This document shows positions 5,812 to 34,616 of a DNA stretch of 37,208 bases, in pieces; the stretch's first letter is position 1; every line of letters starts with the position of its first letter. The position numbers and the translations under genes are program-made. This stretch comes from Octopus bimaculoides. Its lineage: Eukaryota. The DNA lies in the NCBI RefSeq assembly GCF_001194135.2, contig NC_068996.1, forward strand, positions 55,236,988 through 55,274,195, given 5' to 3'. The notes under the pieces are model-generated. The model saw only the letters and a program-made list of their open reading frames with translations, did not search any database and had not been told where the DNA came from.

Positions 5812-5836
5812 TCATTTTGTGACAGAACTCTTTGGC
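5812..5836 (-). CDS. PPP4R4: PPP4R4 terminal coding segment: (R)PKSSVTK-stop
   Basis: Strong acceptor ctctttttttcttatttacag|G CCA AAG AGT TCT GTC ACA AAA TGA followed by an AT-rich, UTR-like sequence. Confidence 0.68.
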
Positions 5837-8800
5837 CTGTAAATAAGAAAAAAAGAGAAAAACAAAAAGAAGTTTTATAACAAATTATTACAAGTAGGAA
5901 GAAATTTACAGACATACATAAACTGCATCATGTGACTCAATAACATGCCACATAACCAGCAGAAAAGAAAGCAGAAAGTGCAATGTTATTTTGTTATATA
6001 TATGTTATGTAGGCAAGCGGCATCATGTGGCCTCTGAAATATGTGCATGATGGATCACATTGCACTACATGTTGGGTAAGTTTTCTTTTAATTTTTCTTA
6101 TCATGGTCTTGGGTCAACCCCAAACCTTATCAGTGAAACTGAGAAGACAGAAACTAGTCAAGCATCTGTCAGGTGGACCATAACTGTAAATCAAAAATGA
6201 AACCAGCCTCCAGAGCACATGTTTGTGGAATATCCACTTACACTACAATTAAACAAGTCAGTTGATTAATCAACTGGAATACTGTTGGTCATTATAACCC
6301 ATGCGAGACATCACATCACCACACACACACAGAAGAGCAATTTATATATGACCAATCCTGCTTTGTTAATAAGGTAAATTGGTGTGAAGCTCATAGAAAT
6401 GGTAAAACAATAATATTAAGGATCACAAGAAGACAGACTGAGGTCTTACCTTTCTAGACTTTTGCTTAGATATCCTGTTCGGTTAACCAACCCTGAAATA
6501 AAGCAACAATTCCATGAAGAATCTCTAAACTATTCTAAATAGTAACAATATAATTTTTTTCTTTCTACTATAAGGACAAGACCTGAAATTTTGGGAGAAA
6601 AAGGGGAGGGGGCAGCATTCAATTTCATTGACCCCAGTACTTGATTGATACTTTGTTTTTTTTTTGGCATGAAAGAATGAAAGGCAAAGTCAACTTTGGT
6701 GGAATTTGAACTCAGAATATAAAGTAGAAGCATTTTGTGTGGCATGTAAATGATTCTGTCTTTGTATATAATTTGCTTTCAACAAGTAGTGAGAACTCTC
6801 TAGTCTTGCACAAAATCTTCAGTTCTAGTGCAATGACAAAAATATACCCAGAACATTTGGATAAATTCTTGGGATTAAGAAGGGTATTCAACTGAAGAAA
6901 CCACGTCAGAAATTCCTTGATTCATCTAGGAGGGCAGTAATGGAATAAGAACTGGTTTGGATTGTGAAGATTTGTTTAACCTTTCCATAACTATATTTTT
7001 AATATCACTGTAATTTAATCAACGTCCTTAGCTGCCATTAATTACTACATCCAGTAATGACTGCACTGTAGTTAATATAATAAAATGCTAATTACACATT
7101 GTAGTATAATTAGCAATTTATGTTAATTACATAGTAATTAACATACTGCAGTAGATACCATGAGAGTAACACACATTGGTTTTTGGTACAAAATGCATTC
7201 TCGTTTATATTGCTAGTCATATCAATCCCAACCATTTCCAGTGCCAAGACCATCAGACCATTTAATAATATAGTATCATATATATATGTGAATGCGCATG
7301 GCTTAGTGGTTAGGGTGTCAACATCATGATCGCAAGATTGTGGTTTCGATTCCTGGACCGGGCGACGCGTTGTGTTCTTGAGCAAAACATTTCATTTCAC
7401 GTTACTCCAGTCCACTCAGCTGGCAAAAATGAGTAACGCTGCGATGGACTGGCGTCCCATCCAGCTGGGGAACACATACGCCATTGAAACTGGGAAACCG
7501 GGCCCATGAGCCTGGTTAGGCTTTAAAAGGGCGCATTTATTTTTTATTATCATATATATATATATATACACACACACAGGGTATCCCCCAAACTGTACAC
7601 ACATTTTAATAGGTGAAAGCTCAATTTTCATTTCTTTTTAGATTCAATCCATTAGAAGTAATGAAGAATAGGGTCAGAGTAAGCTTTTAACAAAAGAAAT
7701 TTATCCTTAAGCACTACTATAAGTTTGAAAACACAATCAAAGTGCACAGATAGACTAGGAGGGAGTTTGAAACAGATCCATGTATATGACTTGCTATCTG
7801 TAGAATTAGAGATAAGTTTGAAGCAGATGGAACTGTTCAGAATGCCACAAGAAACATTCTGTTGAAGAGATACACATATCAATTTTGTTAACTTGAAATA
7901 AAAACTGCTTCATTCTCATCATTGTTTGATGTCTGCTTTCCATGCTGGCATGAGTTGGACGATTTGATTGAAAAGTGGGAAATCAGGGAACTGCACCAGG
8001 CTCCAATCTGATCTGGCAAGGTTTCTACGGCTGGATGCCCTTCTTAACGCCAACCACTTCAAGTTTAGTGGGTGCTTTTTATGTGCCACTGGTACGGGTG
8101 ACATTATCCTGACACTGGCATTTGCCATGACTACAGTCTCACTTGGCTTGACAGGTCAACACAAGCATGATATATTGCCAAAGGTTTTGGTCACCTGTCA
8201 CTGCCTCCACGAGGCCCAATGCTCGTACGGTACTTTTTATGTGCCACTGGCACAGGTTTCAGTCAGACGGCACTGGCATTGGCCATGACTGATTTCTCTA
8301 GGTTCAACAGCGGATCAAGAAACAGGAGAAGCAATCACACAATCAGCAAAGCACAAAATGGATATTCCTCTTTGACCTTGTCATACCATGTTCTCAGTAT
8401 AGTGGGAATATCCATCATCATTGTTTAACATCCACCTTCCATGCATAAACAAATGGTAATGAGCAACATACGTAGAAAAAGAAGTTGAAATATTAAAAAC
8501 AGACAACTGATTATGCTGTAGCTTTGTAGTCAAAGTGTGTTTCTGATGACACATTGTTTATGGTGTCCTCCATAGTTGTTATTTATTCTGGTTTTTGATA
8601 GCAAAAAAAAAAAAGTTTCTATAATGAAACAAGCATGTGATGAACCCAGTACATTGTCTTGTAAACAAGAAAGGTCTAGACCAGTGTTTCCCAAACTTTT
8701 TGTGCTAAATTGCAATATTGCCCACCTATTGACCAAAAAATTCCCCATTGCCCACCCGTGTAAAAAAAACCCTAACACAGCCCTCCCCACCACTGTATCA

Positions 8801-11800
8801 TTTGACACACACACACACACACTATATCATTGACTCGTAGCCCTGTTAATGCCATTTGTACTAAATATGCGGTTGTTTACAAATCCCTTATTGTGGGCTT
8901 ACTTTTGCCATTAGTGTGAATGAAATTCTAACGTTAGCTCTATATCATGCAGACAGATTAACTTCTGGAAACTTGTGCTTTCTTTTACACTGATTTTCAT
9001 TTTCCCCAAATGAACCATTGATCAGAACTACAAATGCAAAAATAATTAATGATTGTATTATAAAGGAAAAGAATAAAACTTTTTAATGAGAACCATGCAT
9101 CTGGTGCGATGCAGCTAGTGCAGATATATTCAGCTTCAAACTTGTCAACTTTAGCCACAAGCCTCCTCATTGTGTCACATCCAGTCCAATTCTTTTATGG
9201 GAAAGTAAAGTTCCAGCATGGTTAAAACCAGATTCAACCAGTTATAAGGTAGGAAAGGCAAGCAAAAGTAATTTCAGATGTTTCTACAGACTGGGGTAGG
9301 AATTCAATATACTCTGATGGTACCACAAGCCTTCTTTGCCATTATGGCGATATTGCATTGTGGAGTCATTGTCATTTTGTAATTCTATCAATTCCTCCTG
9401 AACGTCATCCTCGCAATCAACTGCATCGACCTCAAACGGATTTGGAATATTTAGCACAACAACATCTTGAAATCTCTCCACCGTGTCATCATGCAGTGAT
9501 TGTAAATAGCTGCATTATGTAGTTAAATCCTCATCAACCAATTCATCTTTCAAAAAATCAAGTTCTGGAAATTGATGGAATTAACATTTTGAAATGTCTT
9601 AAACAACAGCAATTTTGAAATGAAGGTAGTGATAAATGATTTACAATTAACGAGAGTTTTTCTGTTTCCTTGCAATAACTTATTCAAGTCATTTAATTTT
9701 GTAAATATATCATAAAGAAAAAGATATTGCTCCTTGCAGCCATCAATGAAGCGGATAGTGGAGTATTTTTGATAAAACAGTTCAACAAAGCATAAAACAC
9801 AGGTTGCTTTTGACAGCCACCACACTACAGTACGGTATAAGAGTTTAGTGTGGTCCTCATCATTTCTCTGACAGAGTTGATGGAAAATTCGATCAGACAA
9901 GGGACTGGACTTCAATTTGTTCACAGTCTTGATAACTAATTGTAGCGCATCATTCAATCTACTGTTCATATTTTTTGCCACTAAATGCTGCTGATGTGCC
10001 AAGCAATGAACAGTTAATATCTGGTGGGACATTTCCCGCTTTAGGAGAGATGAAAAACCTCTGTATCTTCCTATCATTGAAGGGGCTCCATCAGACACAC
10101 AGGCAAGAATATTACTGAGTGGGATATTATGTTCAAAAAGGAAAGACTTGAGAGTGTGAAAAATAGTTGCACCTTTTGCATTAAGTGGCAATTTCTCTGT
10201 GAACATTTCCTCACAAGGTTGAAGGTCTTCGTTGAAATACAGAACATATACCATCAAACATTGATTGTCCACAACATCCACTTGTATAGAAAATTCAAAA
10301 TGCTGGAGAATATTCTTTTCTACTCTAAGCACAAGGCCCAAAATTTTGGGGAGGGGGCTAGTCAATTAGATCAACCCCAGTACACAACTGGTACTTAATT
10401 TATCGGCCCCGAAAGGATGAAAGGCAAAGTCGACCTCAGTGGAATTTGAACTCAGAACGTAGCGGCAGGTGAAATACTGATAAGCATTTCGCCCAGTGTG
10501 CTGGAGAATATTGATGAGCTGATGTTTGGCATTGTTGGCCATTTCATCGATGCATCGAGAAATTGTGTTATTACTAAGTGGGATCTTCTTCATAATGTTA
10601 TCGCGTGTTTCGTGCGTAATGGTTGACAAACCTCTTTGATAACTGGGCGAAGTAATGTTTCTCCAATTGTGTGAGACTTCCCAGACTTAGCAACAAGCAA
10701 TGCATTGTTGTATGATGCAATCAACCCATCATTCTCCTGTTTACTAGTTTCCTGGAGTTGCATGTGGAATGTTTGTATTTGCTTTTTGAAAGAGCAGCTC
10801 AGTTGCAAAAAGTATGATAACGGCTTATCTCCCTTGTCAGAATGCTTTGCATCAAAGTGATACGTCAAGTGTGAAGGTTTCATTGCTTCGTTGGTCAATG
10901 TTTGATAGCAAAGAATGCACATTGGTAACTGCATCACAAAGGCAGTATGGTATTCCCAAAGAGAAGAAGAAGAGCAGAGTCAGATGACATGCCTTTACTG
11001 GAGCAAATACGGATCTAGTACGTTTGGTTGCCAGCATTTCAAAAATTAAAGTTTATCAAAAATTTTAGAATTTGGCACATTAATGTACTTTTCCAAGCTA
11101 AATTATTGGAGTTATTCAACTTTTTCTTGAAAAATGTTTTTAAAAAGTTATAGAGGTTTAAAGTTTGATCATTTTCACCAAGTCAAGAAACACGATTTCA
11201 AAGCTGTCATTTTGCATGTGACTGCACATTTTGTCAACGTCCTGAAAATAGCACGTGTGTTTTGATATGAAACCACAGATTTACACGTGACATTTACTCC
11301 TTATAACTTTTTTACTTTTCAGAATTTTCAGAAAATTTTTGCGAATTTACATTCTATATGCAGGACTTCATATGATTATGGAAAAAAAAAATTGTAGTGG
11401 AGTGTGATTTAAGGCCTAGGTCTATTTGGCTGCTATTTTTAGCATGCATGACAACCATCTCAATGTCTGTGACAAAAATATTCGATCGATAAACAAATCA
11501 ATAAAAGTGCATCCTTATTCTAGTCATGCCTAGATATAGGTAAATGCAGACTTAATTTCTAAAAACTCATTGTCTCCCACAAAATGTTCACATCACCCAT
11601 CAAAATCTCAAATCACCCACCATTTTATGGTAGTCGAAAGGAAACCGGCCTATTCTTCAGAATTATTTTCATGATTCTGTCCATATGTTTGTCTGCAATC
11701 ATTACACTTGAGATATGTATGCAACTTTTTAGTCTTATGCTCAGGAGCCCAGGTGGAAGGTAAAGTTAGACAGAAGGGCTCAGAACAATTCCTTAAACAA

Positions 11801-14800
11801 CATTTTGATGTAAATACTACAAATCAATTTATGTGTGTGTGTGTGTGTTCTTTTACTGGTTTCAGTCATTTGACTGCGGCCACGCTGGAGCACCACTTTA
11901 AAGGGTTTTAGTCAAAGAAATCAATCTCAGGACTTATTCTTTGTAAGCCTAGTATTTATTCTATCAGTTTCTTTTGCCTAACTGCTATGTTACGGGGACA
12001 TAAATGCACCAGCATTAGGTGTCAAGCAATGGTGGGGGGACACAGATACACACACACACATCATTTCATGTCCGCTTTCCATGCTGGCATGGGTTGGATG
12101 ATTTGACTGAGGACTGGCAAACCAGATGGCTCCAATCTGATCTGGCAGTGTTTCTACAGCTGGATGCCCTTCCTAACACCAACCACTCTAAGAGTGTAGT
12201 GGGTGCTTTTACGTGCCACCGGCACAAGGGCCAGTCAGGCAGTACTGACAACGGCCACACTCAAATGGTGTTTTTTACATCACAGGATTCAGTCCAGGGG
12301 CACTGGCAATGACCTCGCTCAAATATTTTACGTGCCAGTAAGGCGCCGCTGGTAACGATCATGCTCAAATGGTGCTTGTTACATGCTACTAGCATGGAAG
12401 CCAGTCAGCTGCTTTGGCAACGATCACGCTTGGATGGTGCTCCACTAGCATGGATGCCAGTCATTGAATTTGATTTTGATTTCACTTGCCTCAACAGGTC
12501 TTCGCAAGCAAAGTTTAGTGTCCAACGAAGGAAAGGTATGCATAAGTGGGCTGGCTACACCTCTGGTAAAGACCACAGGTTATGGTCTCACTTGGCTTGC
12601 CGGGTCTTCTCATGCACTGCATATTTCCAAAGGTCCCGGTCACTCGTCATCGCCTCGGTGAGGCCTAAGGTTCAAAGGTCATGCTTCACCACCTCATCCC
12701 AGGTCTTCCTGGGTCTACCTCTTCCACAGGTTCCCTCAACTGCTAGGGTATGACACTTTTTCACACAGCTATCCTCATCCATTCTCGCCAGATGACCATA
12801 CCAGCGCAATCGTCTCTTTTGCACATCACATCTGATGCTTCGCACACAATGGGCTTCTTTCAGTCTCCGTCTTCCAAATCCACTCACAGGGCTACACACA
12901 CACACATATATATATATATAGATACACGCACACACAAACACATTCTTTGTTAGCATGTGTGGAGAGAGATTAAATTAAGCATACCATGATCTGATGAATT
13001 ATCTGTTGTTGTTGTTGTTGTTATTGTTGCTGTTGCTGTTGTTGTTGTAGAATTGGTGGTTGCCGTAGAAGCAGCTGTGGTGGTGGTAGTGGTGGTGGTG
13101 GTTGTGCTGTTGTTCTTGCGAATACTGAAAATAATGTTTACAGAAAATAAATTATAAATTTATAACAACAAAAAGAAATTTCAGCCTCAGTTGGAGCATT
13201 CCTCAATATTTGGCTGAGATAGTAACATTTTGTTTTATGGCAGCATGTTTTTGGATATTTATTCCTTCCAATAGTTTTGTTCCATTTAGAAAACTACAGC
13301 TACAGTTGAAGTTTATTTAACAAATTACATTTTTAAAATTGTAATTTTAATTTATGGAGGGACAAAATGTTCATTGAAAATATTAACAAAAGTAATAAAA
13401 AATATGTAGTAATTATTAGATGTTAATGATTTATTATTCTGATTCCAAGGATCTAAACTTTGAAGGATTTTAGTTGTGATGGCAAGTCTGAAACTGAAAA
13501 ACTAAAGTTCAACTTTTGGTCCTTCTAAAAATAAAAAAATAAAAAAATAAAAAAAAAACTCTGGAGGATTGTAATTTGTGTTTGATAAAGATTAATTGAA
13601 ATTTTTATAATATTAGTGATATATACACTCTCCATACAACATAAATGGAAACTTCTAAATTTAGTAAAATTTTATCAAAGTAATGATTTTTTTCCCTGAT
13701 CCAAATAGACATTTCATTCAAAATTTGACTTACTTATTGGAACTAGTTGGTTTAATTCCTGATTTTGCTTGTTTTTGAACTCCAGCTGAAGCTTGAAAAT
13801 AAGAAAAGAAACAGTTTAGGAAAATAATGGAGAATGTTTTAAATTGTGAACATGTGTTCCAGCATGGCCACAGTCAAATGGCTGAAACAAGTAAAAGAAT
13901 AAAAGAAAGAAAAGAATGGTAAACATCAATGTTGTATGAGCTTTCTACATGGTTTAGGAGTTTCATTCAATCACGTGATACATGTTCACATGGAGGAAAC
14001 ATCTCACCTCTCCATGCAGAAAATATGTCACTTCCCCAGCATGAATATCAGCCTACATGCAGGACACGTTCCTTTCTACATGTGTAAATGCACCATATTC
14101 TGGCAATACAGAACGGGTGAAACCTCACAATGTTTCTATATTGAAACATTGAGAAAACAGAAGTAACAACATTGAATAATTAATTGAAAACTGAATATAA
14201 ATGGATGGTGATTGGTAAAGTAGATATATAATGTGAACCAGTGGTGGTGGTGGTGGTGTTGCAGGCAGAAATACTACTGTTTGACTAACATCCATTCTAC
14301 CATGCTAGTATTGGTTGAATTGGGGGAGTTGAGACAAGATTTTACAGCTGGATGTTCTTCATGGTGATAATGTTGGTAGAATATTAATTATAAACACATG
14401 ATCACAACATTTGTGGTCGAGGCAAAGGAAATGGAAAAAGTATAGTTAGAAAGAAATCAACTAACTGGTTCTTCATTTAACCTACCTCAAAAAGATGAAA
14501 GCCAATGTTGACTTCCATGAGATTTGAAACCAAAACAGAAAGCTATGCAATGAAATACTACACAATACGTTCTCTATTGTTCTGCTTATTCACTGCTTTA
14601 GTTACATTAAGACAATGATTATTCTAATGATGATGATTTGAATGATGTTTATTTTTCTGTAAATCTAATCAAAAGAAGTTGAAAAACGTTTTCAAAGAGG
14701 AAAATATTGTTGCACAGAAATACTTACTGGGAATATGTGATACAGTGGTAGGTGAGGGTGGTCGAACTGGCGTGGATACTCGAGGAATACGCGTGTTGTT

Positions 14801-17800
14801 ACATAAACGAGTTTCAGCTGATTTACCATCTAAAAACAAATTGGCTTTCATTAAAAATAATTCATAAACACATACAATGATGACTGTAAATTCGTATATA
14901 TTTTACAAAAGCAATAATAGTAAATATAATTTATTATATTGTGATTTCGGTTTTGCCGGGTCAAAGCTAATCTGGAATTTAAACGGTAACAACAACAACA
15001 ACAACTATAATAACTTTTCTGAGTATTTTAAAATTAATTTCCATAAAACTGAAATAAATCATCTTACCTTTTGGTGTAGGAAGAGAAGATGTACCTATCA
15101 CAGGTATTTTTGTGTCTCTTTTGCCAGTAGAGTCCACAAGCTTTGAATCTGGTTTGGAGAATTAAATAAAGTAAAATGAAAAAAAAACAAAAAAAAACAC
15201 ATTTAACTATATAAACCAAAACTTCCACATCTTCTGATTGGTACGGGTGGTGTGCGGAAGAGAAAAGAAGACTTACAGATAGCAGGGTTGGGGAAGGGAA
15301 GGGAAGAAGAGATATTCAAAGCAGGTAATGGGGCAAAGTGGGTGATGGGAGGGTAAAGGAACAGGGGAAGATGTGGTGGTAGGGCCAGGGTAGAGGTGAA
15401 AGGAAAGGGCAAAGATGAAGGAGAAGGTGGGGGTTGGGGCAGTTAAGAGGTGATAGGAGAGCAGAAAGATGCCAACAGCAGGGCTAAGAAAAATTTGGTG
15501 GCAGCAACAGAAAAGTATCATAGAACAGCAAAAGTAATCAAAAATATAAAAAAGAAAAAAGGAAATAAGTAGCTAGAGACGGATGGGGAGGAAGCAGTGC
15601 CCCCCTCCCACTTCTCAACCAGTCTATATTATATTAGAAATATTCAGAAACTAAGACTCTAACCATTCCAAGTATCACCATAATGGATTCCACTGAATAA
15701 CAGTCAACTCCTGCCAGAAGGAACATACCATTCACTTCCCAATTGTATTTGATTTTATTCAACATTAACCATGATTGCACAATGGTGTAACTTGATCTTC
15801 TGTGAGCCAAGATCCATTTTTGGCAGAAACAGTAGGGTTTTGGATTAAAGAAATTGATACAACATTGAAAGAGCAATGTCTCCACCACCACCAACAACAC
15901 TCTGTTCCTCTGAAAAACTAAGTTACATACACAACGCATTCGTCTCTCCTCTTGACACCCCCACACCACACTATAACTGATAATTTCTCCTCAGAATGTC
16001 AACCCTCTGAAATTCCTGCAGACATCAACTTACACATTTTCAAGTAGAACACCATTAACCAGTCTTGGAGGTCATGTGAGAGCTTCAGGCATTGTCCATT
16101 CCACAGGACTAAACTTCAAATATGCACAACACACATTTCATATTTAAAGATTGAAAAGTTATGATCTCTATAAGTTTGTCACAAAAAAGAAAAAAAAAAA
16201 AGAGCATCTTACCTCGTTTAGGAATTTGTGAAGCAGAACATATTGAAGATGTGGATCGGGATTTAACTAGACGACAGTTTGGTATCGAAGAACCTTTGGT
16301 TTTAACTGCAAATTTAATTAAAAACCAACAACAAAATCTTTAAAATTATCAATCAAAAAAATAATCAAAATTTTATAAATTGGATCTAAAAAATAAATAT
16401 TTTTTTTAGTTTTAAATAAATGTAATTTTTAAAATAATTGACTGTATTAATCATTTATTATACAAATTTATCATACAACATTGAAAAGAATATTATCTAA
16501 ATAAAAGTCAATTCAAAACAGTCTTTTATAATCTCTGATTAAAATATATCTTTTACCCCACTCTACCCTCTACATCAGTGATATAAAAACTGCATTATTG
16601 TCAACTTATATAATAAACTGTTGTGTGTGTATGTATGTGTCTTCATCTATTCATCCATGCGGTCAGTAAACCAGTACATTAATCTCACTGCCTCTGTGGT
16701 CAGCAAGTGGTACAATATCAAAATAATTGTTTCTACTATCGTTAATTTTGGGTGACAGGGATAGTTGATTATATTGGCCCCGGTGCTTAACTGGTACTTA
16801 TTTCCTTGACTCAGAAAGGAAGAAGTTGACCTTGGTAGAATTTGAGCTCAAAATGTAGACGAAATGCTCATCACTGTCCAGTGTGCTAACAATTTTGCCA
16901 GCTCATTATCAGAATAATAGTCTTGTACATCTTTAAGCTTGTAGTTTAATTTAAAAGTTCATAACTCAAGAAATATATTCAGAGTACCAGTAAACTAACA
17001 TCACACACACAAGTATGTATAACATAAACAACCCCAACCACTCTCACTCACGCCAACAGAACAGACTGGTCACCTGACCTGATGGAGATGTCAGCCATAT
17101 TGGACAAAGTAAAATCAGAAAAATGGCATAAGTAATTACTCAGGGTAGGCATTTATAAAATATTACGGAGATGTACTTGCATAGCAAGTGACCTGATCTG
17201 AGATCATGTGCTGAAAACAATTGCAGCGTGGAAGGTATTTATAAGCCATTTAAGAAACATAAAAAAACCCTTAGATTCACTTCAATATTTAAATTTAATT
17301 TGCCAAAATATTTTCGTCGCTTTGAGGCTGCAACCTGTTCACTGATGCAACACGGAATTTTGTCAGTGAACAAGTTGCGGTCTTAAAGCAATGAAAATAT
17401 TTTGGCAAATTAAATTTAAATGTTGAAGTGAATCTAACGGATTTTGTGTGTTATTTTAAATGGCTTATAAATACCTTCCAAGCTGCAATTGATTTATAAA
17501 ATATGTTGATAAAAGATTTCAACATTATGAGACAGTAAAAAATATTTTAGCAACAAAAAATTATTTAGTTAGACACACACACACACACATATGTATATCT
17601 GGATGTATGTATGTATATGTAAATAAATTTGTGGTAATCACAGCCATCATCCTACAGGTACTATGTGGTTAAATAAATAAATATATATACATACACACAC
17701 ACACACATGGGTTGTGTGGCTAAGTCTGCTTCCCAACTACATGGTTTCAGGTTCAGTCCCACTGTAAAGCAACTTGAACAAGTGTCTTTTGATATAGCCC

Positions 17801-20800
17801 AGGGACTACCAGTCTTATGAGTGGATTTGGTTAACAAAATCTTAAATCTGTTGTGTGTTCACGCACACATGTATTATATATATGTATACGTGTGTGTGTG
17901 TTTACACTTGAGATCGTTTGTCGCAAGCAGTATTGTTGTCACTTTTCCAGTCAACAAAATGCTTTCTCACTTTTCACTTTTGTAGATGTATGGAATAAGA
18001 GATTCCCTACCAGAAAATCAGGTAAAGCTTAGTGACAGGAAGGCTATTTGACTGCAAAACAATGTTATAAGAAATACATTTGTCTAATTTTAATGTCCAT
18101 CTTTTGTCTATGCTTGGGTAGGACAGGGACATATTTAAAGCAGGATTTTGAAAGTTGAATGTTTTTCTTGTCATCAGCCCCAATCCCAATCCTTGCTTTT
18201 CAAGTCAGGAATTAAAAAAATTCCACAGGCCTTAGAAAGCAAAGACACACGATCTTTATCAACAAGGAATGTAAACATAACAATGTTTAGTTGAGATGGT
18301 GACAAACAGCTTTACAATTTCAATATTTGTGCATGTACACACATACATGTGACATTCTTCCACACAGTTTCCATCTACCAAATTCCCTCATGAGACATTA
18401 GTTAACCTAGAGTAGAAAATACTTATCTACAATGCTGTGCAGTAGGGCTGAACCCAAAACTATAAAGCTACAAAGATAACTTCTTAAGAACAATGCACTG
18501 TATTTATGTCTTATAACTTAGTGATTTGACAAACAGATATTGATAAGAACCAAATTCAGAAATAAGTAGTGGGGCTGGGGCAATATATTTGATATAAATC
18601 CTTCGATGGGGTGCCCCAGTAGGGCCAAAGCCCTATAATATATATACATATATTCCTTACCCTTTGGTGAAGACACTGGTGTTAAACTGGATGAGCAATT
18701 ACTTAAAGATTTTTTACATTCTTTTAATGGAGTTGGACTTGCTCGTTTCTCAGAAGTGGATTTCTGAGCTGAAAACAAAATAGAAAAAACAAAATAATTT
18801 TTTCATCAAAGAATATTTTTATTACAATACTGTTCAAGAAGGAATGGTATTCATCTTCCAATCTTACAAATTTATTTGTTCCATTAATGTACACGCATGC
18901 AAATGGCTTCCACACAGTTTCTGTCTACCAAATACACTATTGATTAACTCAAGTCTACAATCGAAGACAATTGTGGCTGTGTGGTTAAGAAGTTTGCTTC
19001 CCAAACCACTATATGGTTTTCAGTCCCATTACATGGTACCTTAGTCAAGTGTCTCCTAATATGGCTCTCAGCTGACCAAAGCCTTATAAGTGAATCTAGT
19101 AGATGGAAACTGAAAGAAGCCTGTCACATATACCATCAATAGTTGAAACTTGTGCTTTATGCTGGTATGGGTTGGGCTGTTGGACAGGTTCCAATGATTG
19201 CAAGAACTGCACTGTGCAACAATGTCTGCTTTGGCATCATTTCTACAGCTGGAGGACCTTCCTCATACCAACCATTTTACAGTATGTACAGAGCTTTTGT
19301 TTTTAAGGCCACTAGTGCTTTTGAGGTTGTCATGCAGCTTTGTGCTAGGAGGTGAGGGGTTCAAGTATGAGAGAAACAGGTGGCCACAATACAACACACA
19401 CACGCGTGTGTGTGTGTGTGTGTGTGCTACACTGTTTGCTTCATGATATTGAAGATCACATGAAGCAAACAATGTTGTTAGTGTCTTTTGTCAGCAAATC
19501 CCCTGCTTACATTGTACCCTTGAAGCTGTGTGACATAAACCCATTAATGAAAAAAAAACATGTAAGGGTTAATGTGAGAAAAGGTGTCTGGCTGTAAAAT
19601 AAAACCTCAAATTTGTCCAACCCATGCTAGCATGGAAAGATGAACGTAAAACAAATGAATGTAAAGAAGATTGGGAATATGTTTTAAGTGCTGAACCATA
19701 AGAGAACATGTTCCATAATAAAGTTAAGAGATTACTCTATCTGGAAGACAAACCAACATAATGGACATAAATGGTGCCAGGTGTTTTTAGCTAAATTTTT
19801 AATCAATTATTTCTATAGAACTACAACAACAACCCCAGCACCCTTACATATTTACCTGAGACTTTTCTTGGAGAAGGAATTTTAGAAAATGGTACATCTT
19901 TCTTTACTTTTGATTTCTCTTCATTTTTTTCATCCTATAAAAAAAAAAACCCCAAAAATATAAAAAAACAGGCATCTTAGGATGATTAACTTCAAATCAA
20001 AAATGCTTAACAGCTGTATCATTCATCTTAACATTCATTTCTTTTGATGCTTGTGAAATCTGGGAGGGTCTTCTCCAACTCAGCATCTCATCTCTTGTCA
20101 CAGTCCATCATCGTCGGCATTATCAATTCACCCTCGAGATAAGCTTTTACCATTTCTCACCATATTTTCCCAAGTTCCCTTTTTCTGTGGGATTTTACCA
20201 TTTATATAACTGGGCACATTTCACCAAATTGTCAGCCTTCAAACTACATTACACGTCCACACCAATGCATTCTTCTCTCTGGTATACTTCATCTAATTTC
20301 TCATACATTCTGATTTTCCTTCAGCTTATTTCTTCTCTGCCATTCATATACATCAACATTAAGTATCCAACAGAACCTGTTACTTTTTACTTTCCACCCT
20401 TCATATATTCTCCAAATTCAATATCCATATTTTGATACATTCACACCACTGCACTTCATATACAAGTATCAACCTATTCTTCATTCAAAACCAGAATCTC
20501 TTTTTTGCCAAAGAAAAGATTAAATAATAACCCCGTTAACATTTTACATCCAATTCTCACTTTATGCTTTAATAAAATCTTTGCTGCATACTGCTTCTTA
20601 GATTACCTCAGTAACAGATGCCATCAACTACTTCTAAAGGTCACTCTGACTATTTGAAAGACTTCATTTCACAAATTCTTTCACAGGTAACTGCTTGAAA
20701 CACCTTACATTTACAACTTACATTTAGCAAACTTATTTCTTCAGCCTCTCGATGCAAATCTATCAAATCTTCGGCTGTCTGTAATTTCTCCTGAGTTTTT

Positions 20801-23800
20801 GATCCAAGCTGAAGATTTCAACAAAAACATGAAATGTTTAATGTTATTAGAATATAATATTGTCAGAAAGAGAATGACATAAATGAAGTAATTCTTCAGA
20901 TAGTGGTCACGTAAAGATACTTTCCATATTTGGTAGTCTGTGTCAGTATGAATAATGGTTGTGAATAAATGCCAGAATTATGATAATATGATTATTTCAG
21001 AAGTTCAAACAACTGAACCAGCAACTCATTATTCAATTATAATGCAAGTGGCTGAATACTCCATAGCTGTGTGTACCTTTAATGTGTTTCTTAGACTAAA
21101 ATCAGTATGACAAGTGTGTTTGATAAAGATGGTCTTTGAACTTCATCCATCCATCAACTGACAAAATTTGGGTTAATCCCTGGCTATGGCAGAAGACACT
21201 TGCCCAACATACCATGCAGTGGGACTGAATCCAGGACAACAGGATTAACAATCAACTTTATAACCATTTGATCATGACTGTAATTTAATATTAAACTTTT
21301 ATTACCATATTTCTGTTGAAATAAACTGCTTTTATTTCAATTTTGTGGCATGTAGAAAGCACCATTCAAGCATGCCTGATGCCAGTGCTGCCTAACTGGC
21401 ATGTAAGAAGCACCATCTGAATGTGGTCAATGCCAGTGTCTCCTGACTGGCTCCTGTGGCGGTGACACGTAAAATGCACCCATTACACTCTCAGAGTGGT
21501 TGGTGTTAAGAAGGGCATCCAGCTGTAGGAATCTTGCCAAATCAGACTGGAGCCTGGTGAAGCCTCCTGGTTTGCCAGTCCTCAGTCAAATCGTCCACCC
21601 CATGCCAGCATGGAAAGCGGATGTTAAACAGCAACGATGACAATGATGAATTGTTTTAATTAAGATTGCTTTAAAACAAGAAGCTTGTATAGAAGAACTA
21701 GGGGCAGTCTCAGGTAGGTTGCTGTCACTCAGGTTAATTACATACATATACAAATTAAATTTGGGTCATCAATTTGCTTAAAATTGGGAAAATAATATGT
21801 AATCATTATTCCTGGCAATAACATATACCAATTCTATGAAGACATCCTTTTAACTGACTAAAAATAATTCATTTTACAATAATTCATTAAAATATGAAGA
21901 CATTGAGAGTTAATACAAGTATTTCAATCAATTGATAGAACATTGTTAGGCTAAACAATTTGATTTAACAATACAAATACTGACTCATTAGCAACCAATC
22001 GTTAAGATAATATTGAGGTACACTTACCAAATGAACAGGCACAACAATTTGTTCTAGATCCCAGAGTGCCTAAATTTAATAAAGAATATTTTAAAAAGTC
22101 AGTGAAAAAGAAATTGAGACAAAATAACGAGTAGGAGTAGGGAGACAAACCAGGAGCAGGACAAAATAAAGAGCAGAGTAGAAAGATAAACCAAGGTTAA
22201 TGCATGGGGAAAGAGAATTTTGTGGTTGAAGGAGGGGAGAACAGGATGGTCACTGTAATGTGTAGATGTGTGAATAACAATATTAATGGATAAGAATATC
22301 TGATAAGTGAGATGGTTCTGGATAGCAAGAGAGAAAAGTGATATCAGAATGTGGGGTAAGAACTGCAGGGGATGATATGGTGTGGGGTGGGGATGGTAAC
22401 ATGAAGTGGGGATTGATTGGGTTCCTCATTTATATATATACATACACTCACAAAAAGATATGAATTATGTATAGATGTGTGTGTGTGTGTGTGTATATAT
22501 ACATATATATATCTATATCTATATAGATAACATATACCCACGCAGTGCCACAGAAGTCAGTCTTCATTATGATGGGTAGGTTTTCACAAGGAACCCACGT
22601 TGCCAGATATCCTGGGCCTTTGTCATTTCCTCTGTGAGGCCTAAGATCCCAAGGTCAGTCTCCATGATTTCATTCCATATCTTCTTCATTCACAAGTTTC
22701 AGCCATGCTTAGTGTTTCAACACTTCTTTATACAAGTGTGCATGAGGACATGCATCATGCATGTGTAGCAGTAAGGTCCTCTTTCTTGCACAAAGCATCT
22801 GATCACTCTTATGCCCAGTCTTTCTCTCAGCACATTTTTACTATTATCTTTGTGCACATCCAGCAGGGCACGCTAGTTTCGTTTCTTTCCAGACAGCTCC
22901 ATGTCCTCTGCATTGGAGACCAAAGTCTCACTACCATGTAGCATTACAATTCTAGCACAAGCATCATATAGTCTGTGGGGAAAGACCTGCCTTTGTTGAC
23001 AGCATGCCAGCAGTGGTAGTAGCTCCCTCAATGTCACCAACCTTTTCTTACTCTGGCTACGGTGCTTTCACAGCAGTCATCTCTCTTGCTAATTACATCT
23101 CCTAACTAACAAAATCTCTGCACTACTTCCAGTGAGCCATCTGGACATTTAAGAGACTCAATTTCTGGTGTGCTTGTATGAGCTGTTCCAATATACCTAC
23201 CACATTTTCAGATAGTCTGCTAGTGATTCCTTTCTTGTGTGTCCAAAGCTTACATTGAGTACCGTTTATACCTACTCTTTTTCTGCATATCAAGCAAGGC
23301 CGTTTCACTAAAGGCACCAGGGTCCTGTCTTTTTTTGCTATTTGCTAAAATCTTGTCTTTGTTAGGTTACCCATAAGGTTCCTCATGCTTGGAATTTCTT
23401 CTCTAATTCCTCTACAGATTCAGTTATGAGGACTAGACTGGCATATAAGAGTTCCTATGGACATCCAGTCTTAAACTCTTATGGGACTATGATGAATAGG
23501 AGGAGGACAAAGAACTGAGCCTTGATATACTCCAACCCTCACACTAGATTCATTGCCAACTCTCACAAGCCATTCATCAATGCTCAATTTTCTTAATGAC
23601 CACCAGATTACTGTACATGGTACCCAATCAAATGCCTCCTCCAGGTCAACAAAGGCTAGAAATAATGGTTTACTTTTGGTCAAGTATTTCTCCTGAAGTT
23701 GCCTCACTAGGAATACTGCCATTCATGGTACCTCTTCCAGACACAAAACCAAACTTAATCTCATCTAGATCTATCCTGTCACAAATTAGCTGTGCAATGA

Positions 23801-26800
23801 TTCTTTTTATAATCTTCATAACCTGATCCAGTTTTTTAAAATTCTTCTATAAGTGCTTGTCTCTATGCTATCACCTTTGCCTTTGTAGCAGTTTACAATG
23901 ATACTGCTTCACCAGTTGCTGGTTATGACTCTCTCTTATAAGACTTAATTTACTATCTACGTGGTAATCCTGTACCTGTCCTCACCAAATATTTCCAGCA
24001 TCCCAGCAATTATCCCAGATGGTCCTGCAGCCTTCTTTCTCTTCATGACCTTCACTGCCTCATCTACTATACTGCTGTCAGCTTGAATTTGCTGGTGCCC
24101 CTATAAGATCAACATGAGATAGCCCATTTTTATCCCATGTGTTTTCCATACTCAAGCTGTCATAACAGCACTTCCATGCCACTTTCTTGTCTTTCCTATT
24201 GATGGCAAGTATGCTTTTATCATTCCAAGCACACTCTTCACCAATTACGTCTCAGTTCTCTCTCTCACACACTTCTTTGCAAACCTGAACACCTCTGATG
24301 CTCATTTTGCAGGACATGCACAAATCACTTTCTCTCTGCTTCACCCTTAGTCAAATATATCTGTCGTTTAGGTGATCTTTTAGCTACATGCCTATGCTTC
24401 CTATTATTTCCACTTCCTTCCAAGTTTCCAAAACTTGTTTCTTGGTCTTTGTAGCTGTATCAACAGAGTATTGTTCCACCACCACATTACTTCCATTCCG
24501 GTTGGGACTTTGCTCCAGACACATGTCTGATCAGTGGCCCTGAGCATGCTACTTTGTAAAAATTCCCAATTTCCATCTACATTACACGTGTCTAAGTCTA
24601 CATTGTTGCAGTCATATGCATCAGTTAGTACTTCTCTGAATCTCTTTCCAATTGCAGGCCTTTAGTTTCTATATTTTCCTTCTCCATGTTGTCGTTCATC
24701 ACTGGGTGTCTTCCTGGCCCTAATTCTGAAGTCACTAACCATTAATCTGTGTTGTGCAGAGCATTCTTCACAAGGAAAGATTTTGGCATTTACAATAGAT
24801 GTTCTGAAAAAGCAAATGTTGTGAGGTCCCTTTAGTCAGTCTCACTGAGCACTCATTAATCACTCCAGTACTGGTTCTTTGATAAAAACACACTCTATAA
24901 AGTAGTCGGCGATTGGAAGGGTATCTGGTAGTAGAAATAAACCCAAGTACCCATCTATTAAGAAGCGTGGCCTCCAATAACAAATGACAGATTGTGATGA
25001 CTTGTTTGACCCATGTTAGCCTAGAAAGTAGATAGAAAATGATCAACCTGACGTTATGGTAGAAACATTTGTATAAAGATGCTGTGCAACAGGGTTGAAC
25101 CCCAAAACAAGAGGTTGCTAGGCATGCTTTTCAATGACCCAGCCATGCTTGTGCTCAGACAAAGAAGTCCTTGACTTAAAATGGATTGGACATAGCTGGA
25201 AAACTTCTGATTAATAAATCTACTCCCTTAGAACTGAATTGGGGTTAAACAGAAACAACAATTTTAAATTTTAGTAAACAATCTGAAAATTTCGTGAAAA
25301 TTAAAACTAAAGCCATTTTAATGAATTGTACAAGTAGGTCCTTACCTGTTTGGCAAAACTGAGTACATCTGGGTCTTTGTCAGATCTGAGTATTTTGCTG
25401 ACAACATTACAGAGATCAGATAAGCGGGCATCATCTTCGGGTAAATTTAGTGTTTGTTTCATGCACGGAATGAATCTACAGAGTTTTAAGCGAATATTTG
25501 GAACTGGATCACAATATAGACTAAGGGCATTATCAAAGAGCTTCTCTTTGAAAAATGATTTAGAATATATATCTAAACTGATGCTGCAAACATCAAGAAA
25601 AAGACTTCGAAAATAGCAGTTACCCACGGACAATTCTGTAAAGAAACAAAATGTTACATTTTAAAAATATGTTCTCAAAATTACCTGTCAAATAATGACT
25701 AGTGTAGTAACCGAGGGAGATAAATCGAATTAGTTTTGGCTTATTTCCCTTGTGGGACCGATCAAGAAGACGATATATATATATCGATCAATAGATGTAC
25801 ACATTTATGTGTACATATGTTCCTTTTTAATTTATGATTTTGGTTTCTCAGACTGGGGAAAAAAATTGAAAAACCACTGTTATACATTAAAACCTAACAT
25901 GTAAGCACATCCGGATCTTTGTGATTTGACGGGCAACACTTGTTTTCTTAACAAAACACTTTCAAACTTGGGACACTGGTAGAATGTGTCATACAAAACA
26001 ACTTTTTCTCTTAGCCTTCTTAACAAAAAATTGTACATCGCAAGTTATTTCATGTTAAAATTGTCGTATTTCTGTAATTTCAACCAATCACTGACATCTA
26101 TTCAGCTGAATACAGTCAGTGCTGGCCGGTCATAAAAATGTTATTCCCTGTGACATATTTCATCCGGTTTAATCGTAATTTATACGCATATATTGTTTAT
26201 ATAATAAATTACGCTGTGCATATCTGTGTGTGTATATTTTTCCCATAACNNNNNNNNNNNNNNNNNNNNNNNNNNNNNNNNNNNNNNNNNNNNNNNNNNN
26301 NNNNNNNNNNNNNNNNNNNNNNNNNNNNNNNNNNNNNNNNNNNNNNNNNNNNNNNNNNNNNNNNNNNNNNNGGAGGTGCATTAATAATTCTGGTAGCTCC
26401 AATAACAAGTGCAGGCAATATTCAAGTATTCCCCTTTGTTTACGAACAGTCTAGTTAATCCGAAATGTCAGAACTAACGGGGATTAATACCATATACACT
26501 GTCACAGCACTAACTGTATTCAACTGAATAGACGTCAGTGATTAGTTGAAATTATCGAAATAAGACAATTTTTAACGTGAAATAACTTCGAATACAAAAT
26601 GTATTATCTGTTCTATACCACAAAATATACAAGTATACGAAGTTTGAAAGTGTTTCGGTATCAAAAACACTACATAAAAAAATGTTGCCCGTCAAATCAC
26701 AAAGGTCCGCACATCCATTCATTGATCCAAATCTTCATGTTTCTTGATTAATCCCACAAGGAAAATAAATCAGAACTAATTCGATTTATCTCCCTTCATT

Positions 26801-27257
26801 ACTCGTCTAAACGATATTTAAATAGTATTGTTTTTAACAACATAACATTTATTGCAAATACACAAGTGTCTGATTTGCTTTAATTACTTTAATAGCTATT
26901 TTTTTTTTATATTTAAAAAGTTGGTTTTAATTTTATGAATGTCAGAAAAAATGTTTTGCAGTATCTGTTCTGGCTCTTTAAATTCTGAGTTAAAATCCTG
27001 CTTTCTTCTTTCCAGAGATGAGAAGATAAAATACCAATCTAAGGACTGGAGTTGATAGTATTAACTAACGCTGTCTCCTAAAAGTCATTGGCTCTCTGCC
27101 TCAATAAATAAGCATTATTTTCTATAAATATCATGAAATAAGGTAAAACTATAATTATTGTATGCAGGCAATATCGCCTGATGCTCGTCAAAAGCATACA
27201 GTAAATATGTTTTTACTACACAATATTCCTATCATATGATGGCTAACTCAGTAGCTA

Positions 27258-27319
<62 letters not shown>

Positions 27320-30300: not shown

Positions 30301-30772
30301 GCCAGGCTATTTCATAATTAAAAGGATTCTATATGTCTATTTTTTTAATCTTCCTTCTTGACTATTTGTGGGTCATAGGAGCATTGATTAAAATAAAATT
30401 CCTGAAGTAAAAATTACTAAACAGAGCCAATTTTATACAAATACGTACAGCTTTTTTCAGTTTAGTGTAGATCACCGGCATAATTTTTACATAAATAGTT
30501 TCTGAATTAAACCACTTTGGAAGACTAGACAGAGTAAGTACAAACTCTTCTTGTAGTCGCCAAGAATAAGAGGAGAATATCACAGATTCTGCTGCCATGA
30601 TGGCTGGAATGATTTCTGCTACCTAGAAAGAAAATCAANNNNNNNNNNNNNNNNNNNNNNNNNNNNNNNNNNNNNNNNNNNNNNNNNNNNNNNNNNNNNN
30701 NNNNNNNNNNNNNNNNNNNNNNNNAAATCAAAAAGTATGTATTTCACTTCGTGTAAATATAATTGTTTTAAA

Positions 30773-30814
<42 letters not shown>

Positions 30815-32169: not shown

Positions 32170-32231
<62 letters not shown>

Positions 32232-34571: not shown

Positions 34572-34616
<45 letters not shown>

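What the first reader, a model, noticed from the sequence alone, without database searches (positions are those of the whole stretch)
14728..19934. Array of seven SxIP (EB1-binding-type) motifs in the PPP4R4 tail: a candidate plus-end-tracking PP4 subunit
Seen: the spliced tail contains FSKIPSPRK (SKIP at 19875-19886), GSSIPN and ASQIPKR (exon 16213-16305), DTKIPV and TSSLPTPK (exon 15068-15148), and NTRIPR and VSHIPT (exon 14728-14829). That is seven [ST]-x-[IL]-P matches, six of them with Ile, in about 155 aa of basic, acid-poor, S/T/P-rich sequence. Nearby S/T-P-x-K/R sites include SPRK, TPLK and TPVR. Established: SxIP in basic disordered context is the EB1/MAPRE-binding microtubule tip localisation signal, often multivalent and switched off by flanking CDK/GSK3 phosphorylation (e.g. 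CLASP2, APC, MACF, MCAK). Inference: this PP4R4 may carry PP4 catalytic activity to growing microtubule ends and could dephosphorylate its own switch. From memory the human PPP4R4 tail has no such array, so it may be lineage-specific. Caveat: one SSLP also occurs by chance in the HEAT region.
Basis: partly seen in the sequence, partly recalled or inferred. Interest (0 to 1): 0.8.

Follow-up and report, generated by a model that had tools for sequence, protein, structure and literature searches.

The report
Conserved EB1-type motifs in octopus PPP4R4
The disordered tail of the octopus phosphatase-4 regulatory subunit PPP4R4 carries seven real, non-random SxIP motifs, the kind that tether proteins to growing microtubule ends, and they are shared across protostome animals rather than special to octopus, which makes PPP4R4 a good but untested candidate for bringing a phosphatase to microtubule tips.

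Summary
On the minus strand, thirteen canonical AG/GT exons splice in one frame. They reproduce the RefSeq Octopus bimaculoides PPP4R4 protein. Exons 19934-14728 encode 154 aa holding seven [ST]x[IL]P motifs, against 0.49 expected; none of 200,000 shuffles exceeded five. AlphaFold2 predicts this tail to be disordered, directly after the HEAT solenoid and an acidic helix.

The EB1-binding interpretation fits the evidence but is untested. The motifs are more conserved than their flanks between Octopus and Argonauta. The first SKIP is 91-95% conserved in 22 lophotrochozoan tails whose columns average 42%. In 34 protostome tails [ST][KR]IP is 44-fold enriched, while the reversed motif is not enriched. 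Flank preferences match published EB1 ligands: K/R at x, no acidic residue after the Pro, basic residues downstream.

The "lineage-specific" inference is wrong. Molluscs, annelids, nemerteans, priapulids and arthropods all have these motifs. Octopods expanded about three ancestral molluscan motifs to seven. Most deuterostomes have no array; mammals keep a degenerate TxLP-KxIP at the same position.

In Haliotis and Physella, annotated isoforms skip the exons carrying the internal motifs, so motif number varies between isoforms.

No paper found links PPP4R4 to SxIP or EB1. I classify it as a new candidate member of a known kind.

The parts
22028..35508 (-). C-terminal half of the PPP4R4 HEAT solenoid, seven exons: 35508-35389, 32850-32773, 31538-31464, 30622-30449, 29329-29224, 25635-25346, and a 42-nt mini-exon 22069-22028 (ALWDLEQIVVPVHL).
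   Evidence: All have canonical AG/GT sites and join in one frame. They match RefSeq P0182 residues 363-660. The region resembles the PP2A A (PR65) subunit, E=5e-7. AlphaFold2 predicts a helical solenoid with pLDDT mostly above 85.
20722..20808 (-). Exon T0: acidic helix (LGSKTQEKLQTAEDLIDLHREAEEISLLN) that precedes the motif-bearing tail.
   Evidence: AlphaFold2 predicts a helix at residues 671-699. The acidic E/K-rich helix is conserved in all aligned tails.
19856..19934 (-). Exon T1, carrying motif 1, SKIP (19886-19875), in the context KKDVPF-SKIP-SPRKVS. The motif is followed directly by a CDK-type site, SPRK.
   Evidence: The S-K-I-P columns are 91-95% conserved in 22 lophotrochozoan tails whose occupied columns average 42%. 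The motif sits 46-61 aa after the end of the HEAT domain in nearly all protostomes. It resembles the MACF ligand SKIPTPQRK.
18661..18768 (-). Exon T2 (108 nt, phase 1-1): S/T/P/K-rich linker with SP/TP sites (SPTPLK, TPVSSPK) and no SxIP motif.
   Evidence: It is spliced to T1 in transcript contig L001 from a related cephalopod.
16213..16305 (-). Exon T3 (93 nt, phase 1-1): SSIP (16291-16280) and SQIP (16231-16220), within ...KTKG-SSIP-NCRLVKSRSTSSICSA-SQIP-KRD.
   Evidence: The block LVKS[KR]ST...SQIP[KR]R is shared with Haliotis, Solemya, oysters, scallop and mussel.
15068..15148 (-). Exon T4 (81 nt, phase 1-1): TKIP (15113-15102) followed by hydrophobic VIG, and SSLP (15089-15078) followed by TPK.
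   Evidence: DTKIPVIGTSSLP is identical in Argonauta. [KR]IP[VL] is shared with gastropods and bivalves. A hydrophobic post-SxIP stretch raises EB1 affinity in published work.
14728..14829 (-). Exon T5 (102 nt, phase 1-1): TRIP (14794-14783), followed by RVSTPVRPPSP, and SHIP (14740-14729).
   Evidence: TRIPRVSTPVRPPSP is identical in Argonauta, where SHIP is replaced by SPIP.
5812..13791 (-). Remaining tail exons of the RefSeq model: T6 13791-13734 (TSAGVQKQAKSGIKPTSSN), T7 13124-12985 (poly-Thr low complexity), T8 6492-6450 (LVNRTGYLSKSLE), and the last exon 5836-5812 (PKSSVTK, then stop).
   Evidence: There are no further SxIP motifs here.

Best explanation
The window holds the C-terminal 60% of the Octopus bimaculoides PPP4R4 gene. 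PPP4R4 is a PR65-like HEAT scaffold that forms a heterodimer with the PP4 catalytic subunit.

Downstream of the HEAT solenoid and one acidic helix lies a disordered, basic, Ser/Thr/Pro-rich tail of about 230 aa. It carries seven short linear motifs of the SxIP type. I propose that these are microtubule tip localisation signals. Each would dock into the EBH domain of EB1/MAPRE dimers. Together they would give multivalent, low-affinity, fast-exchanging binding that concentrates PP4c-PPP4R4 on growing microtubule plus ends.

I propose two layers of control. The first is alternative splicing: the exons that carry the internal motifs are symmetric (phase 1-1), and their counterparts are cassette exons in other molluscs, so isoforms would carry from one to many motifs. 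The second is proline-directed phosphorylation of the SP/TP sites that flank the motifs, which in known +TIPs weakens EB binding.

The feature is ancestral to protostomes. Octopods enlarged the array from about three motifs to seven.

Shown here: gene identity, splicing frame, motif excess, predicted disorder, conservation, and match to published EB-ligand preferences.
Inferred, not shown: EB binding, tip tracking, phospho-regulation, splicing regulation in octopus, and what PP4 dephosphorylates at the tip.
For: Gene identity and frame:
- The spliced product equals RefSeq P0182.
- The best hits are annotated PPP4R4 across Metazoa.
- The HEAT part resembles the PP2A A subunit.
- There is a spliced transcript contig in a related cephalopod.

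Non-randomness:
- Seven motifs against 0.49 expected; none of 200,000 shuffles exceeded five.
- There is no exon duplication.

Disorder: AlphaFold2 gives pLDDT below 50 and no secondary structure for residues 701-930, directly after helix 671-699.

Conservation above the flanks:
- Octopus versus Argonauta: 25/28 motif residues identical against 77/126 flank residues, Fisher p=0.003.
- The S-K-I-P columns are 91-95% conserved against a 42% mean. They are four of only six columns at or above 85% beyond the acidic helix.

Specificity, in 34 protostome tails:
- [ST]x[IL]P: 124 observed against 17.2 in shuffles.
- [ST][KR]IP: 53 against 1.2.
- Reversed P[IL]x[ST]: 13 against 17.

Match to EB ligands:
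- The x position is 51% K/R. There are no acidic residues at the two positions after Pro. Basic residues are enriched downstream.
- An EB1 aptamer screen found K/R preferred at x and R/V at +1 (PMC3967968).
- The MACF ligand is KPSKIPTPQRK, and hydrophobic VLL after the motif raises affinity about 100-fold (PMC12695022). Compare octopus SKIPSPRK, TKIPVIG and TRIPRV.

Splicing: Haliotis rufescens and Physella acuta RefSeq isoforms differ by skipping of the internal motif exons, while SKIP is constitutive. Octopus T2-T5 are 108, 93, 81 and 102 nt, all phase 1-1.

Precedent and context:
- iASPP, a PP1 regulatory subunit, binds EB1 through an SxIP motif (PMC8562848).
- PP4 is already tied to microtubule organisation (PMC7196183, PMC2290842).
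Against: - No binding or localisation data exist for any PPP4R4. No paper in the searchable library links it to SxIP or EB1.
- Three octopus motifs have an acidic neighbour (D before TKIP; KRD after SQIP; TPKD after SSLP). This may weaken them.
- In chelicerates and a priapulid the positionally equivalent first motif is G-K-I-P, not S/T-x-I-P. The truly conserved core is therefore [KR]-I-P, which departs from the strict consensus and leaves room for another partner.
- SxIP alone has very low affinity; the flanks decide binding.
- Counts across species are not phylogenetically independent.
- Most deuterostomes lack the motifs, so any function is not universal to PPP4R4.
- Human PP4R4 was described as a cytosolic complex (title cited), with no microtubule link reported.
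- Cassette use of T2-T5 in octopus itself is inferred, not observed.
Confidence: 0.6

Rival explanations
1. The conserved [S/T/G]-[K/R]-I-P motifs are functional short linear motifs, but for a partner other than EB1. Examples would be a substrate or adaptor that PP4-PPP4R4 recruits, or an intramolecular contact with the HEAT domain or PP4c.
For: The deepest conserved core is [KR]-I-P; some ecdysozoans have Gly at position 1. Several gastropod copies are A/V-R-[KR]-I-P-V. There is no experimental link to EB1.
Against: I know of no other motif class that fits [ST]x[IL]P in a basic, disordered context. The position-specific preferences (K/R at x, R/V at +1, no acidic residue after Pro, basic downstream) reproduce those measured for EB1 ligands. 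Multivalency is typical of +TIPs.
Confidence: 0.22
2. The tail is a generic basic, phospho-regulated, disordered region, for example a microtubule-lattice or membrane binder or a kinase-substrate region. The IP dipeptides are conserved for reasons unrelated to a docking motif.
For: The tail is rich in K/R, S/T and SP/TP sites. Other conserved elements exist in relatives, such as ARRGS and the terminal KK[ST]SK.
Against: Conservation is concentrated on the four motif residues while the neighbouring columns vary. The reversed or permuted motif with the same composition is not enriched.
Confidence: 0.1
3. The motif count is a chance product of S/T/P-rich composition, or of recent internal duplication.
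For: S, T and P are abundant in the tail. One SSLP also occurs in the folded HEAT region.
Against: None of 200,000 shuffles exceeded five motifs. There is no exon-to-exon similarity. The motifs are conserved in Argonauta at 67% overall identity and across phyla.
Confidence: 0.01
4. The exons are mis-predicted, and the tail is not made in this frame.
For: I had no octopus RNA-seq. The RefSeq and other models are computational. The far 3' end differs between models.
Against: All 13 junctions are canonical and in one frame. The product is identical to RefSeq P0182. The same peptide blocks are encoded in independent genomes from several phyla. A spliced transcript contig from a related cephalopod covers HEAT through T2.
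Confidence: 0.02

Closest known systems
MACF/ACF7 (and APC) C-terminal SxIP microtubule tip localisation signal
   Same: The motif core and context are nearly the same: MACF KPSKIPTPQRK against octopus PFSKIPSPRKV, and SSKIPGPKK in other molluscs. Both lie in a disordered, basic, S/P-rich tail.
   Different: MACF has a single motif next to a GAR microtubule-binding domain, and its binding is proven. PPP4R4 has an array on a phosphatase scaffold and is untested.
CLASP1/2, SLAIN2, GTSE1: multivalent SxIP +TIPs with phospho-switches
   Same: Several SxIP or SxLP copies lie in a Ser/Arg/Lys-rich disordered region flanked by CDK/GSK3-type sites. Valency drives tip accumulation. This point rests on established knowledge; only part of it was read here.
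   Different: Those proteins regulate microtubule dynamics directly, for example through TOG domains. PPP4R4 would deliver an enzyme instead.
iASPP/PPP1R13L, a PP1 regulatory subunit that binds EB1 via SxIP (PMC8562848)
   Same: It is a phosphatase regulatory subunit brought to plus ends by an SxIP motif.
   Different: It belongs to a different phosphatase family (PP1) and has a single motif in a vertebrate protein. PPP4R4 is a PP4 scaffold with an array, conserved in protostomes and largely absent in vertebrates.
TTBK1/2, kinases with two SxIP motifs
   Same: A signalling enzyme is targeted to plus ends by tandem SxIP motifs in a disordered tail (PMC4555816 abstract).
   Different: TTBK is a kinase and PPP4R4 serves a phosphatase. 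PPP4R4 would be a possible counterpart.
Vertebrate PPP4R4 (KIAA1622)
   Same: It is the ortholog: the same HEAT scaffold, acidic helix and disordered S/T-rich tail.
   Different: It has no array. Mammals have only T[TS]LP-K[NS]IP-[IV]SVPG after the helix. Birds have lost even that. Fish have SS[IM][IL]P followed by acidic residues.

Membership tests
PPP4R4 (PP4 regulatory subunit 4) | Orthology to annotated PPP4R4 proteins | tested here: met
   The window exons translate to RefSeq O. bimaculoides PPP4R4 (P0182) residues 363-930. The top hits across Metazoa are named PPP4R4.
PPP4R4 (PP4 regulatory subunit 4) | PR65-like HEAT-repeat solenoid | tested here: met
   phmmer against PDB hits the PP2A A subunit at E=5e-7 over about 240 aa. 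Pfam HEAT is below threshold. AlphaFold2 predicts paired helices across residues 62-651 with high pLDDT.
PPP4R4 (PP4 regulatory subunit 4) | Binds the PP4 catalytic subunit | not testable with these tools
   Known for human PP4R4 from the literature. It is inferred for octopus by orthology.
SxIP-type +TIP (EB1-dependent microtubule tip localisation signal) | [S/T]-x-[I/L]-P core | tested here: met
   Seven instances, six of them with Ile.
SxIP-type +TIP (EB1-dependent microtubule tip localisation signal) | Motif lies in an intrinsically disordered region | tested here: met
   AlphaFold2 gives pLDDT below 50 and no secondary structure for residues 701-930, which hold all seven motifs. This is a prediction, not a measurement.
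SxIP-type +TIP (EB1-dependent microtubule tip localisation signal) | Basic, Ser/Pro-rich flanks with few acidic residues near the motif | tested here: inconclusive
   SKIP, SSIP and TRIP have 2-5 K/R and 0-1 D/E within six residues on each side. TKIP, SQIP and SSLP each have one Asp close by. The flank of SHIP continues into the next exon. Family-wide, the profile fits: 51% K/R at x and 0% acidic at +1/+2.
SxIP-type +TIP (EB1-dependent microtubule tip localisation signal) | Motif conserved above its flanks in orthologs | tested here: met
   p=0.003; 91-95% against a 42% mean.
SxIP-type +TIP (EB1-dependent microtubule tip localisation signal) | Direct binding to the EB1 EBH domain, abolished by IP-to-NN mutation | not testable with these tools
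   No complex prediction or binding assay is available here.
SxIP-type +TIP (EB1-dependent microtubule tip localisation signal) | EB-dependent comet-like tracking of growing plus ends | not testable with these tools
   Requires live-cell imaging.

The most novel reading that the evidence does not exclude
PP4c-PPP4R4 is the ancestral plus-end-resident phosphatase of protostome animals. It rides EB1 comets through a splice-tunable array of SxIP motifs. There it resets the CDK/GSK3 phospho-switches of other SxIP +TIPs, and its own. Vertebrates largely lost this targeting, which would explain why mammalian SxIP screens never found it.
Probability: 0.28. Interest if true: 0.75.

Novelty: new member of a known kind. 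Interest (0 to 1): 0.6.

Why it matters
Binding of SxIP proteins to EB1 is switched off by phosphorylation near the motif. Which phosphatases act at plus ends is called a poorly understood area in the EB1 literature (PMC4365484).

PP4 is needed for microtubule organisation in flies, worms and mammals. Its subunit PP4R4 has no assigned cellular role in the review I checked.

A positionally fixed EB1-type motif in PPP4R4, conserved across molluscs, annelids, nemerteans, priapulids and arthropods, gives a concrete and cheap-to-test targeting mechanism. It also suggests that alternative splicing sets how strongly the phosphatase is recruited. And it shows that restricting motif screens to mammals can miss ancient +TIP candidates.

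Tried and rejected
- The first homolog search used a concatenation of my hand-picked exons and returned nothing. This was a limit of the word index, not absence: the HMMER search of the representative library and a search with P0001 found hundreds of orthologs.
- I considered an open frame at 20107-20000 (TRDEMLSWRRPSQ...) as an exon and rejected it. It has no usable acceptor or donor, and RefSeq does not use it.
- I first missed the 42-nt mini-exon 22069-22028. It was recovered from the ortholog alignment.
- Pfam gives only sub-threshold HEAT/Cnd1 hits for the scaffold.
- I tested for exon duplication among T1-T5. None was found.
- The long intronic ORFs (9553-10979, 12675-12974, 23474-23722, 24407-24661) gave no Pfam hit at E<=0.01.
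- Rfam at gathering threshold found nothing in the window. Tandem repeats are only simple microsatellites.
- The original PP4R4 paper (PMC2662017) is not held.
- I used a from-memory fragment of vertebrate PPP4R4 only to choose which anonymous hits to look up by name. No conclusion rests on it.
- Other docking-motif classes (RVxF, LxVP, PxIxIT, FxxP, SH3 PxxP, classical NLS) were compared by eye with the conserved blocks. None fits across taxa.

Full report
**What is in the sequence**

The window is AT-rich animal DNA with assembly gaps. The feature lies on the minus strand.

Every interval is bounded by an AG acceptor behind a polypyrimidine tract and by a GTAAG/GTAAA donor. Thirteen exons join in a single open frame:

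- HEAT part: 35508-35389, 32850-32773, 31538-31464, 30622-30449, 29329-29224, 25635-25346, 22069-22028.
- T0 20808-20722
- T1 19934-19856
- T2 18768-18661
- T3 16305-16213
- T4 15148-15068
- T5 14829-14728

The frame continues through 13791-13734, 13124-12985 and 6492-6450 to a stop at 5812.

tblastn of the RefSeq Octopus bimaculoides protein "serine/threonine-protein phosphatase 4 regulatory subunit 4" (P0182) reproduces this exon map from residue 363 to the C-terminus. Its tail is identical to my translation. The window therefore holds the 3' 60% of the O. bimaculoides PPP4R4 gene.

An intron-free Logan contig from run SRR29271470 (L001) encodes a 77%-identical cephalopod ortholog. It shows the HEAT, mini-exon, T0, T1 and T2 junctions spliced in this frame at the RNA level.

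**Is it PPP4R4?**

The scaffold part matches the PP2A A (PR65) subunit in PDB at E=5e-7. A HMMER search of 1.8 billion representative proteins found 693 relatives. The closest are named PPP4R4 in Octopus vulgaris and O. sinensis, Haliotis, Elysia, Physella, Holothuria, fishes, myriapods, a termite and others. A second search added named PPP4R4 from about a hundred further animals. A third added tetrapods.

AlphaFold2 with a 32-sequence alignment predicts three parts:

- a confident HEAT solenoid at residues 62-651;
- one helix at 671-699, which is the acidic T0/T1 segment;
- residues 701-930 with pLDDT below 50 and no secondary structure.

All seven motifs lie in that last stretch.

**Is the motif count more than chance?**

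The 154 aa of T1-T5 hold seven [ST]x[IL]P matches, six of them with Ile. Composition predicts 0.49. In 200,000 shuffles the maximum was five, and four for the Ile-only form. Six of the eight Ile residues in the tail are used in the motif.

Control patterns with the same composition, such as the reversed motif, occur zero times in the octopus tail. The exons show no DNA or peptide similarity to one another beyond the motif, so this is not a recent tandem duplication.

**Conservation**

Argonauta hians PPP4R4 is 67% identical overall and keeps seven motifs. Of the motif residues, 25 of 28 are identical, against 77 of 126 of the other tail residues (Fisher p=0.003). The blocks DTKIPVIGTSSLP and TRIPRVSTPVRPPSP are unchanged, while the segments between them have diverged.

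In an alignment of 22 lophotrochozoan tails (cephalopods, gastropods, bivalves, a chiton, an annelid, two nemerteans and a bryozoan), the S, K, I and P columns of the first motif are 91-95% conserved. The mean for occupied tail columns is 42%. These four are among only six columns at or above 85% beyond the acidic helix.

Two more blocks are shared among molluscs: LVKS[KR]ST...SQIP[KR]R and [ST/x][KR]IP[VL]. This suggests about three ancestral molluscan motifs, with four more added in octopods.

**The array is not cephalopod-specific**

Across 34 protostome tails:

| Pattern | Observed | Shuffled mean | Ratio |
|---|---|---|---|
| [ST]x[IL]P | 124 | 17.2 | 7.2 |
| [ST][KR]IP | 53 | 1.2 | 44 |
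| Reversed, P[IL]x[ST] | 13 | 17 | 0.8 |

A millipede has 8 motifs, a centipede 7 and a termite 7.

In nearly all protostomes the first x-[KR]-[IL]-P sits 46-61 residues after the HEAT domain, right behind the acidic helix. It reads SKIP in lophotrochozoans, GKIP[VI] in chelicerates and a priapulid, and S[KR]IP in myriapods.

Twenty-seven deuterostome tails show 13 matches against 7.4 expected, and almost no IP dipeptide. Cnidarians share one QRLPN.SSALP block.

Tetrapods have no array. Mammals keep T[TS]LP-K[NS]IP-[IV]SVPG at the equivalent position. Birds have lost it. Fish have SS[IM][IL]P followed by acidic residues, plus SSMPVLIRS.

The feature is protostome-wide, possibly older, and octopods merely have one of the larger arrays. 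These cross-species counts are not phylogenetically independent, but the control patterns share that bias and are not enriched.

**Does it look like an EB1 ligand?**

The position-specific profile of 122 protostome instances shows the following:

- 51% K/R at the x position, against an 18% background;
- no acidic residue at the two positions after Pro;
- enrichment of basic residues at +3/+4 and at -5.

An EB1 peptide-aptamer screen reported K/R preferred at x and R/V at +1 (PMC3967968).

The reference MACF ligand is KPSKIPTPQRK, with a Kd of 3.5 uM. The four-residue core alone binds very weakly. C-terminal positive charges and hydrophobic residues right after the motif (VLL) raise affinity up to 100-fold (PMC12695022).

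Octopus SKIPSPRKV, and SSKIPGPKK in other molluscs, resembles the MACF ligand. TKIPVIG, and gastropod RKIPVLV or RRIPVLV, resemble the high-affinity hydrophobic class. TRIPRV matches the aptamer consensus.

There are weak points. TKIP is preceded by Asp. SQIP and SSLP have an Asp three to four residues downstream. The Gly at position 1 in some ecdysozoans departs from the strict consensus.

**Regulation**

SP/TP sites flank several motifs (SKIP-SPRK, SSLP-TPK, TRIPRVSTPVRPPSP). This is the arrangement by which phosphorylation weakens EB binding in known +TIPs (PMC4365484). The SPRK after motif 1 is found in cephalopods and the chiton only; other taxa have GPKK or APKK.

RefSeq isoforms of Haliotis rufescens and Physella acuta differ precisely by skipping the exons that carry the internal motifs, whereas the first SKIP is present in all isoforms. 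In octopus the corresponding exons T2-T5 are 108, 93, 81 and 102 nt, all phase 1-1, so each could be skipped without breaking the frame. Motif valency may therefore be set by splicing. For octopus this is an inference.

**What is known**

PP4R4 forms a heterodimer with PP4c and has no assigned targeting function in the review I read. PP4 is required for microtubule organisation at centrosomes and acts on NDEL1.

No paper in the searchable library mentions PPP4R4, PP4R4 or KIAA1622 together with SxIP or EB1 in a relevant way.

A precedent exists for a phosphatase regulatory subunit using SxIP: iASPP, for PP1 (PMC8562848). TTBK2 is the kinase analogue.

**Verdict**

The gene assignment and splicing are confirmed.

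The EB1-tip-tracking interpretation is the best-supported mechanism. I give it about 0.6, because conservation and context are strong while binding is untested.

The lineage-specific claim is not supported and should be replaced by [quoted passage not shown].

It is a new candidate member of a known kind (SxIP +TIPs). It is of moderate to good interest because it offers a testable route for a phosphatase to reach plus ends.

Noticed in passing
Relatives P0153-P0162 (Haliotis rufescens) and P0016, P0176-P0180 (Physella acuta); window exons 18768-18661, 16305-16213, 15148-15068, 14829-14728: Annotated isoforms in two gastropods differ by skipping of the tail exons that carry the internal SxIP/[KR]IPV motifs. 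The first SKIP is in every isoform. The octopus counterparts are all symmetric phase 1-1 exons, so motif number may be splice-tunable.
   Followed up: partly
Tetrapod relatives P0355, P0356, P0364, P0408, P0397, P0398, P0417, P0404: Mammals have T[TS]LP-K[NS]IP-[IV]SVPG directly after the acidic helix, the same position as the protostome SKIP. Alligator has KNIP and a frog has SGLP-KNLP. Birds lack it, and some isoforms skip this segment. It is possibly a degenerate remnant of the same motif.
   Followed up: partly
Fish relatives P0259, P0266, P0267, P0271, P0014: Teleost tails share SSMPVLIRSNT, which resembles the gastropod [KR]IPVLV block with Met in place of Ile. They also share SS[IM][IL]P followed by NDD.
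   Followed up: no
Lophotrochozoan tails in the alignment; window 13124-12985: Most lophotrochozoan PPP4R4 tails end with a conserved ARRGS[LMV]xS block (a basophilic-kinase-type site) and a terminal KK[ST]SK. Octopods lack both. They have instead a poly-Thr low-complexity exon (T7) encoded by an ACN-rich microsatellite-like stretch.
   Followed up: no
Window 6492-6450 and 5836-5736: Exon T8 is 43 nt. When it is included, the last exon reads PKSSVTK then stop (O. bimaculoides, O. sinensis, O. vulgaris X7). When it is skipped, as in the O. vulgaris X4 model, the same last exon is read in another frame: QRVLSQNDLQCPNCISFAVDLLALNSARDSIQ. This gives two alternative C-termini from one exon.
   Followed up: partly
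L001 2530-2630 (Logan SRR29271470): The related cephalopod transcript contig is spliced through T2 and then runs into what looks like the next intron (AAAG|GCAAGT...), ending the ORF at ...SSPKGKY. This is either intron retention or an alternative short-tail isoform carrying only the first SKIP plus an SVLP.
   Followed up: no
Cnidarian relatives P0257, P0258, P0263, P0282, P0291: All five cnidarian tails share SSLQRLPN[LIM][SA]SALP, that is, one xRLP plus one SALP. This may mean an SxLP-type motif predates bilaterians.
   Followed up: no
Window 9553-10979 (minus), 12675-12974 (minus), 23474-23722 and 24407-24661 (minus): Long intronic open frames (271, 106, 129, 100, 83 and 85 aa) look like transposon remnants by eye, but none hits Pfam at E<=0.01.
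   Followed up: partly
Window 2344-3144, 26250-26371, 30639-30724: Three assembly gaps (runs of N). The third ends 17 nt upstream of the acceptor of exon 30622-30449. No coding sequence appears to be lost, because the RefSeq protein maps contiguously.
   Followed up: yes
Window 14782-14750 and 19874-19863: Ser/Thr-Pro sites sit directly against motifs. SKIP-SPRK is a full CDK consensus. TRIPRV-STP-VRPPSP contains an S-T-P that would fit a Polo-box docking site if phosphorylated.
   Followed up: no
The word-indexed homolog search found nothing with a concatenation of short exons, although a 98-100% identical protein is in the same collection. Whole proteins as queries worked.
   Followed up: yes
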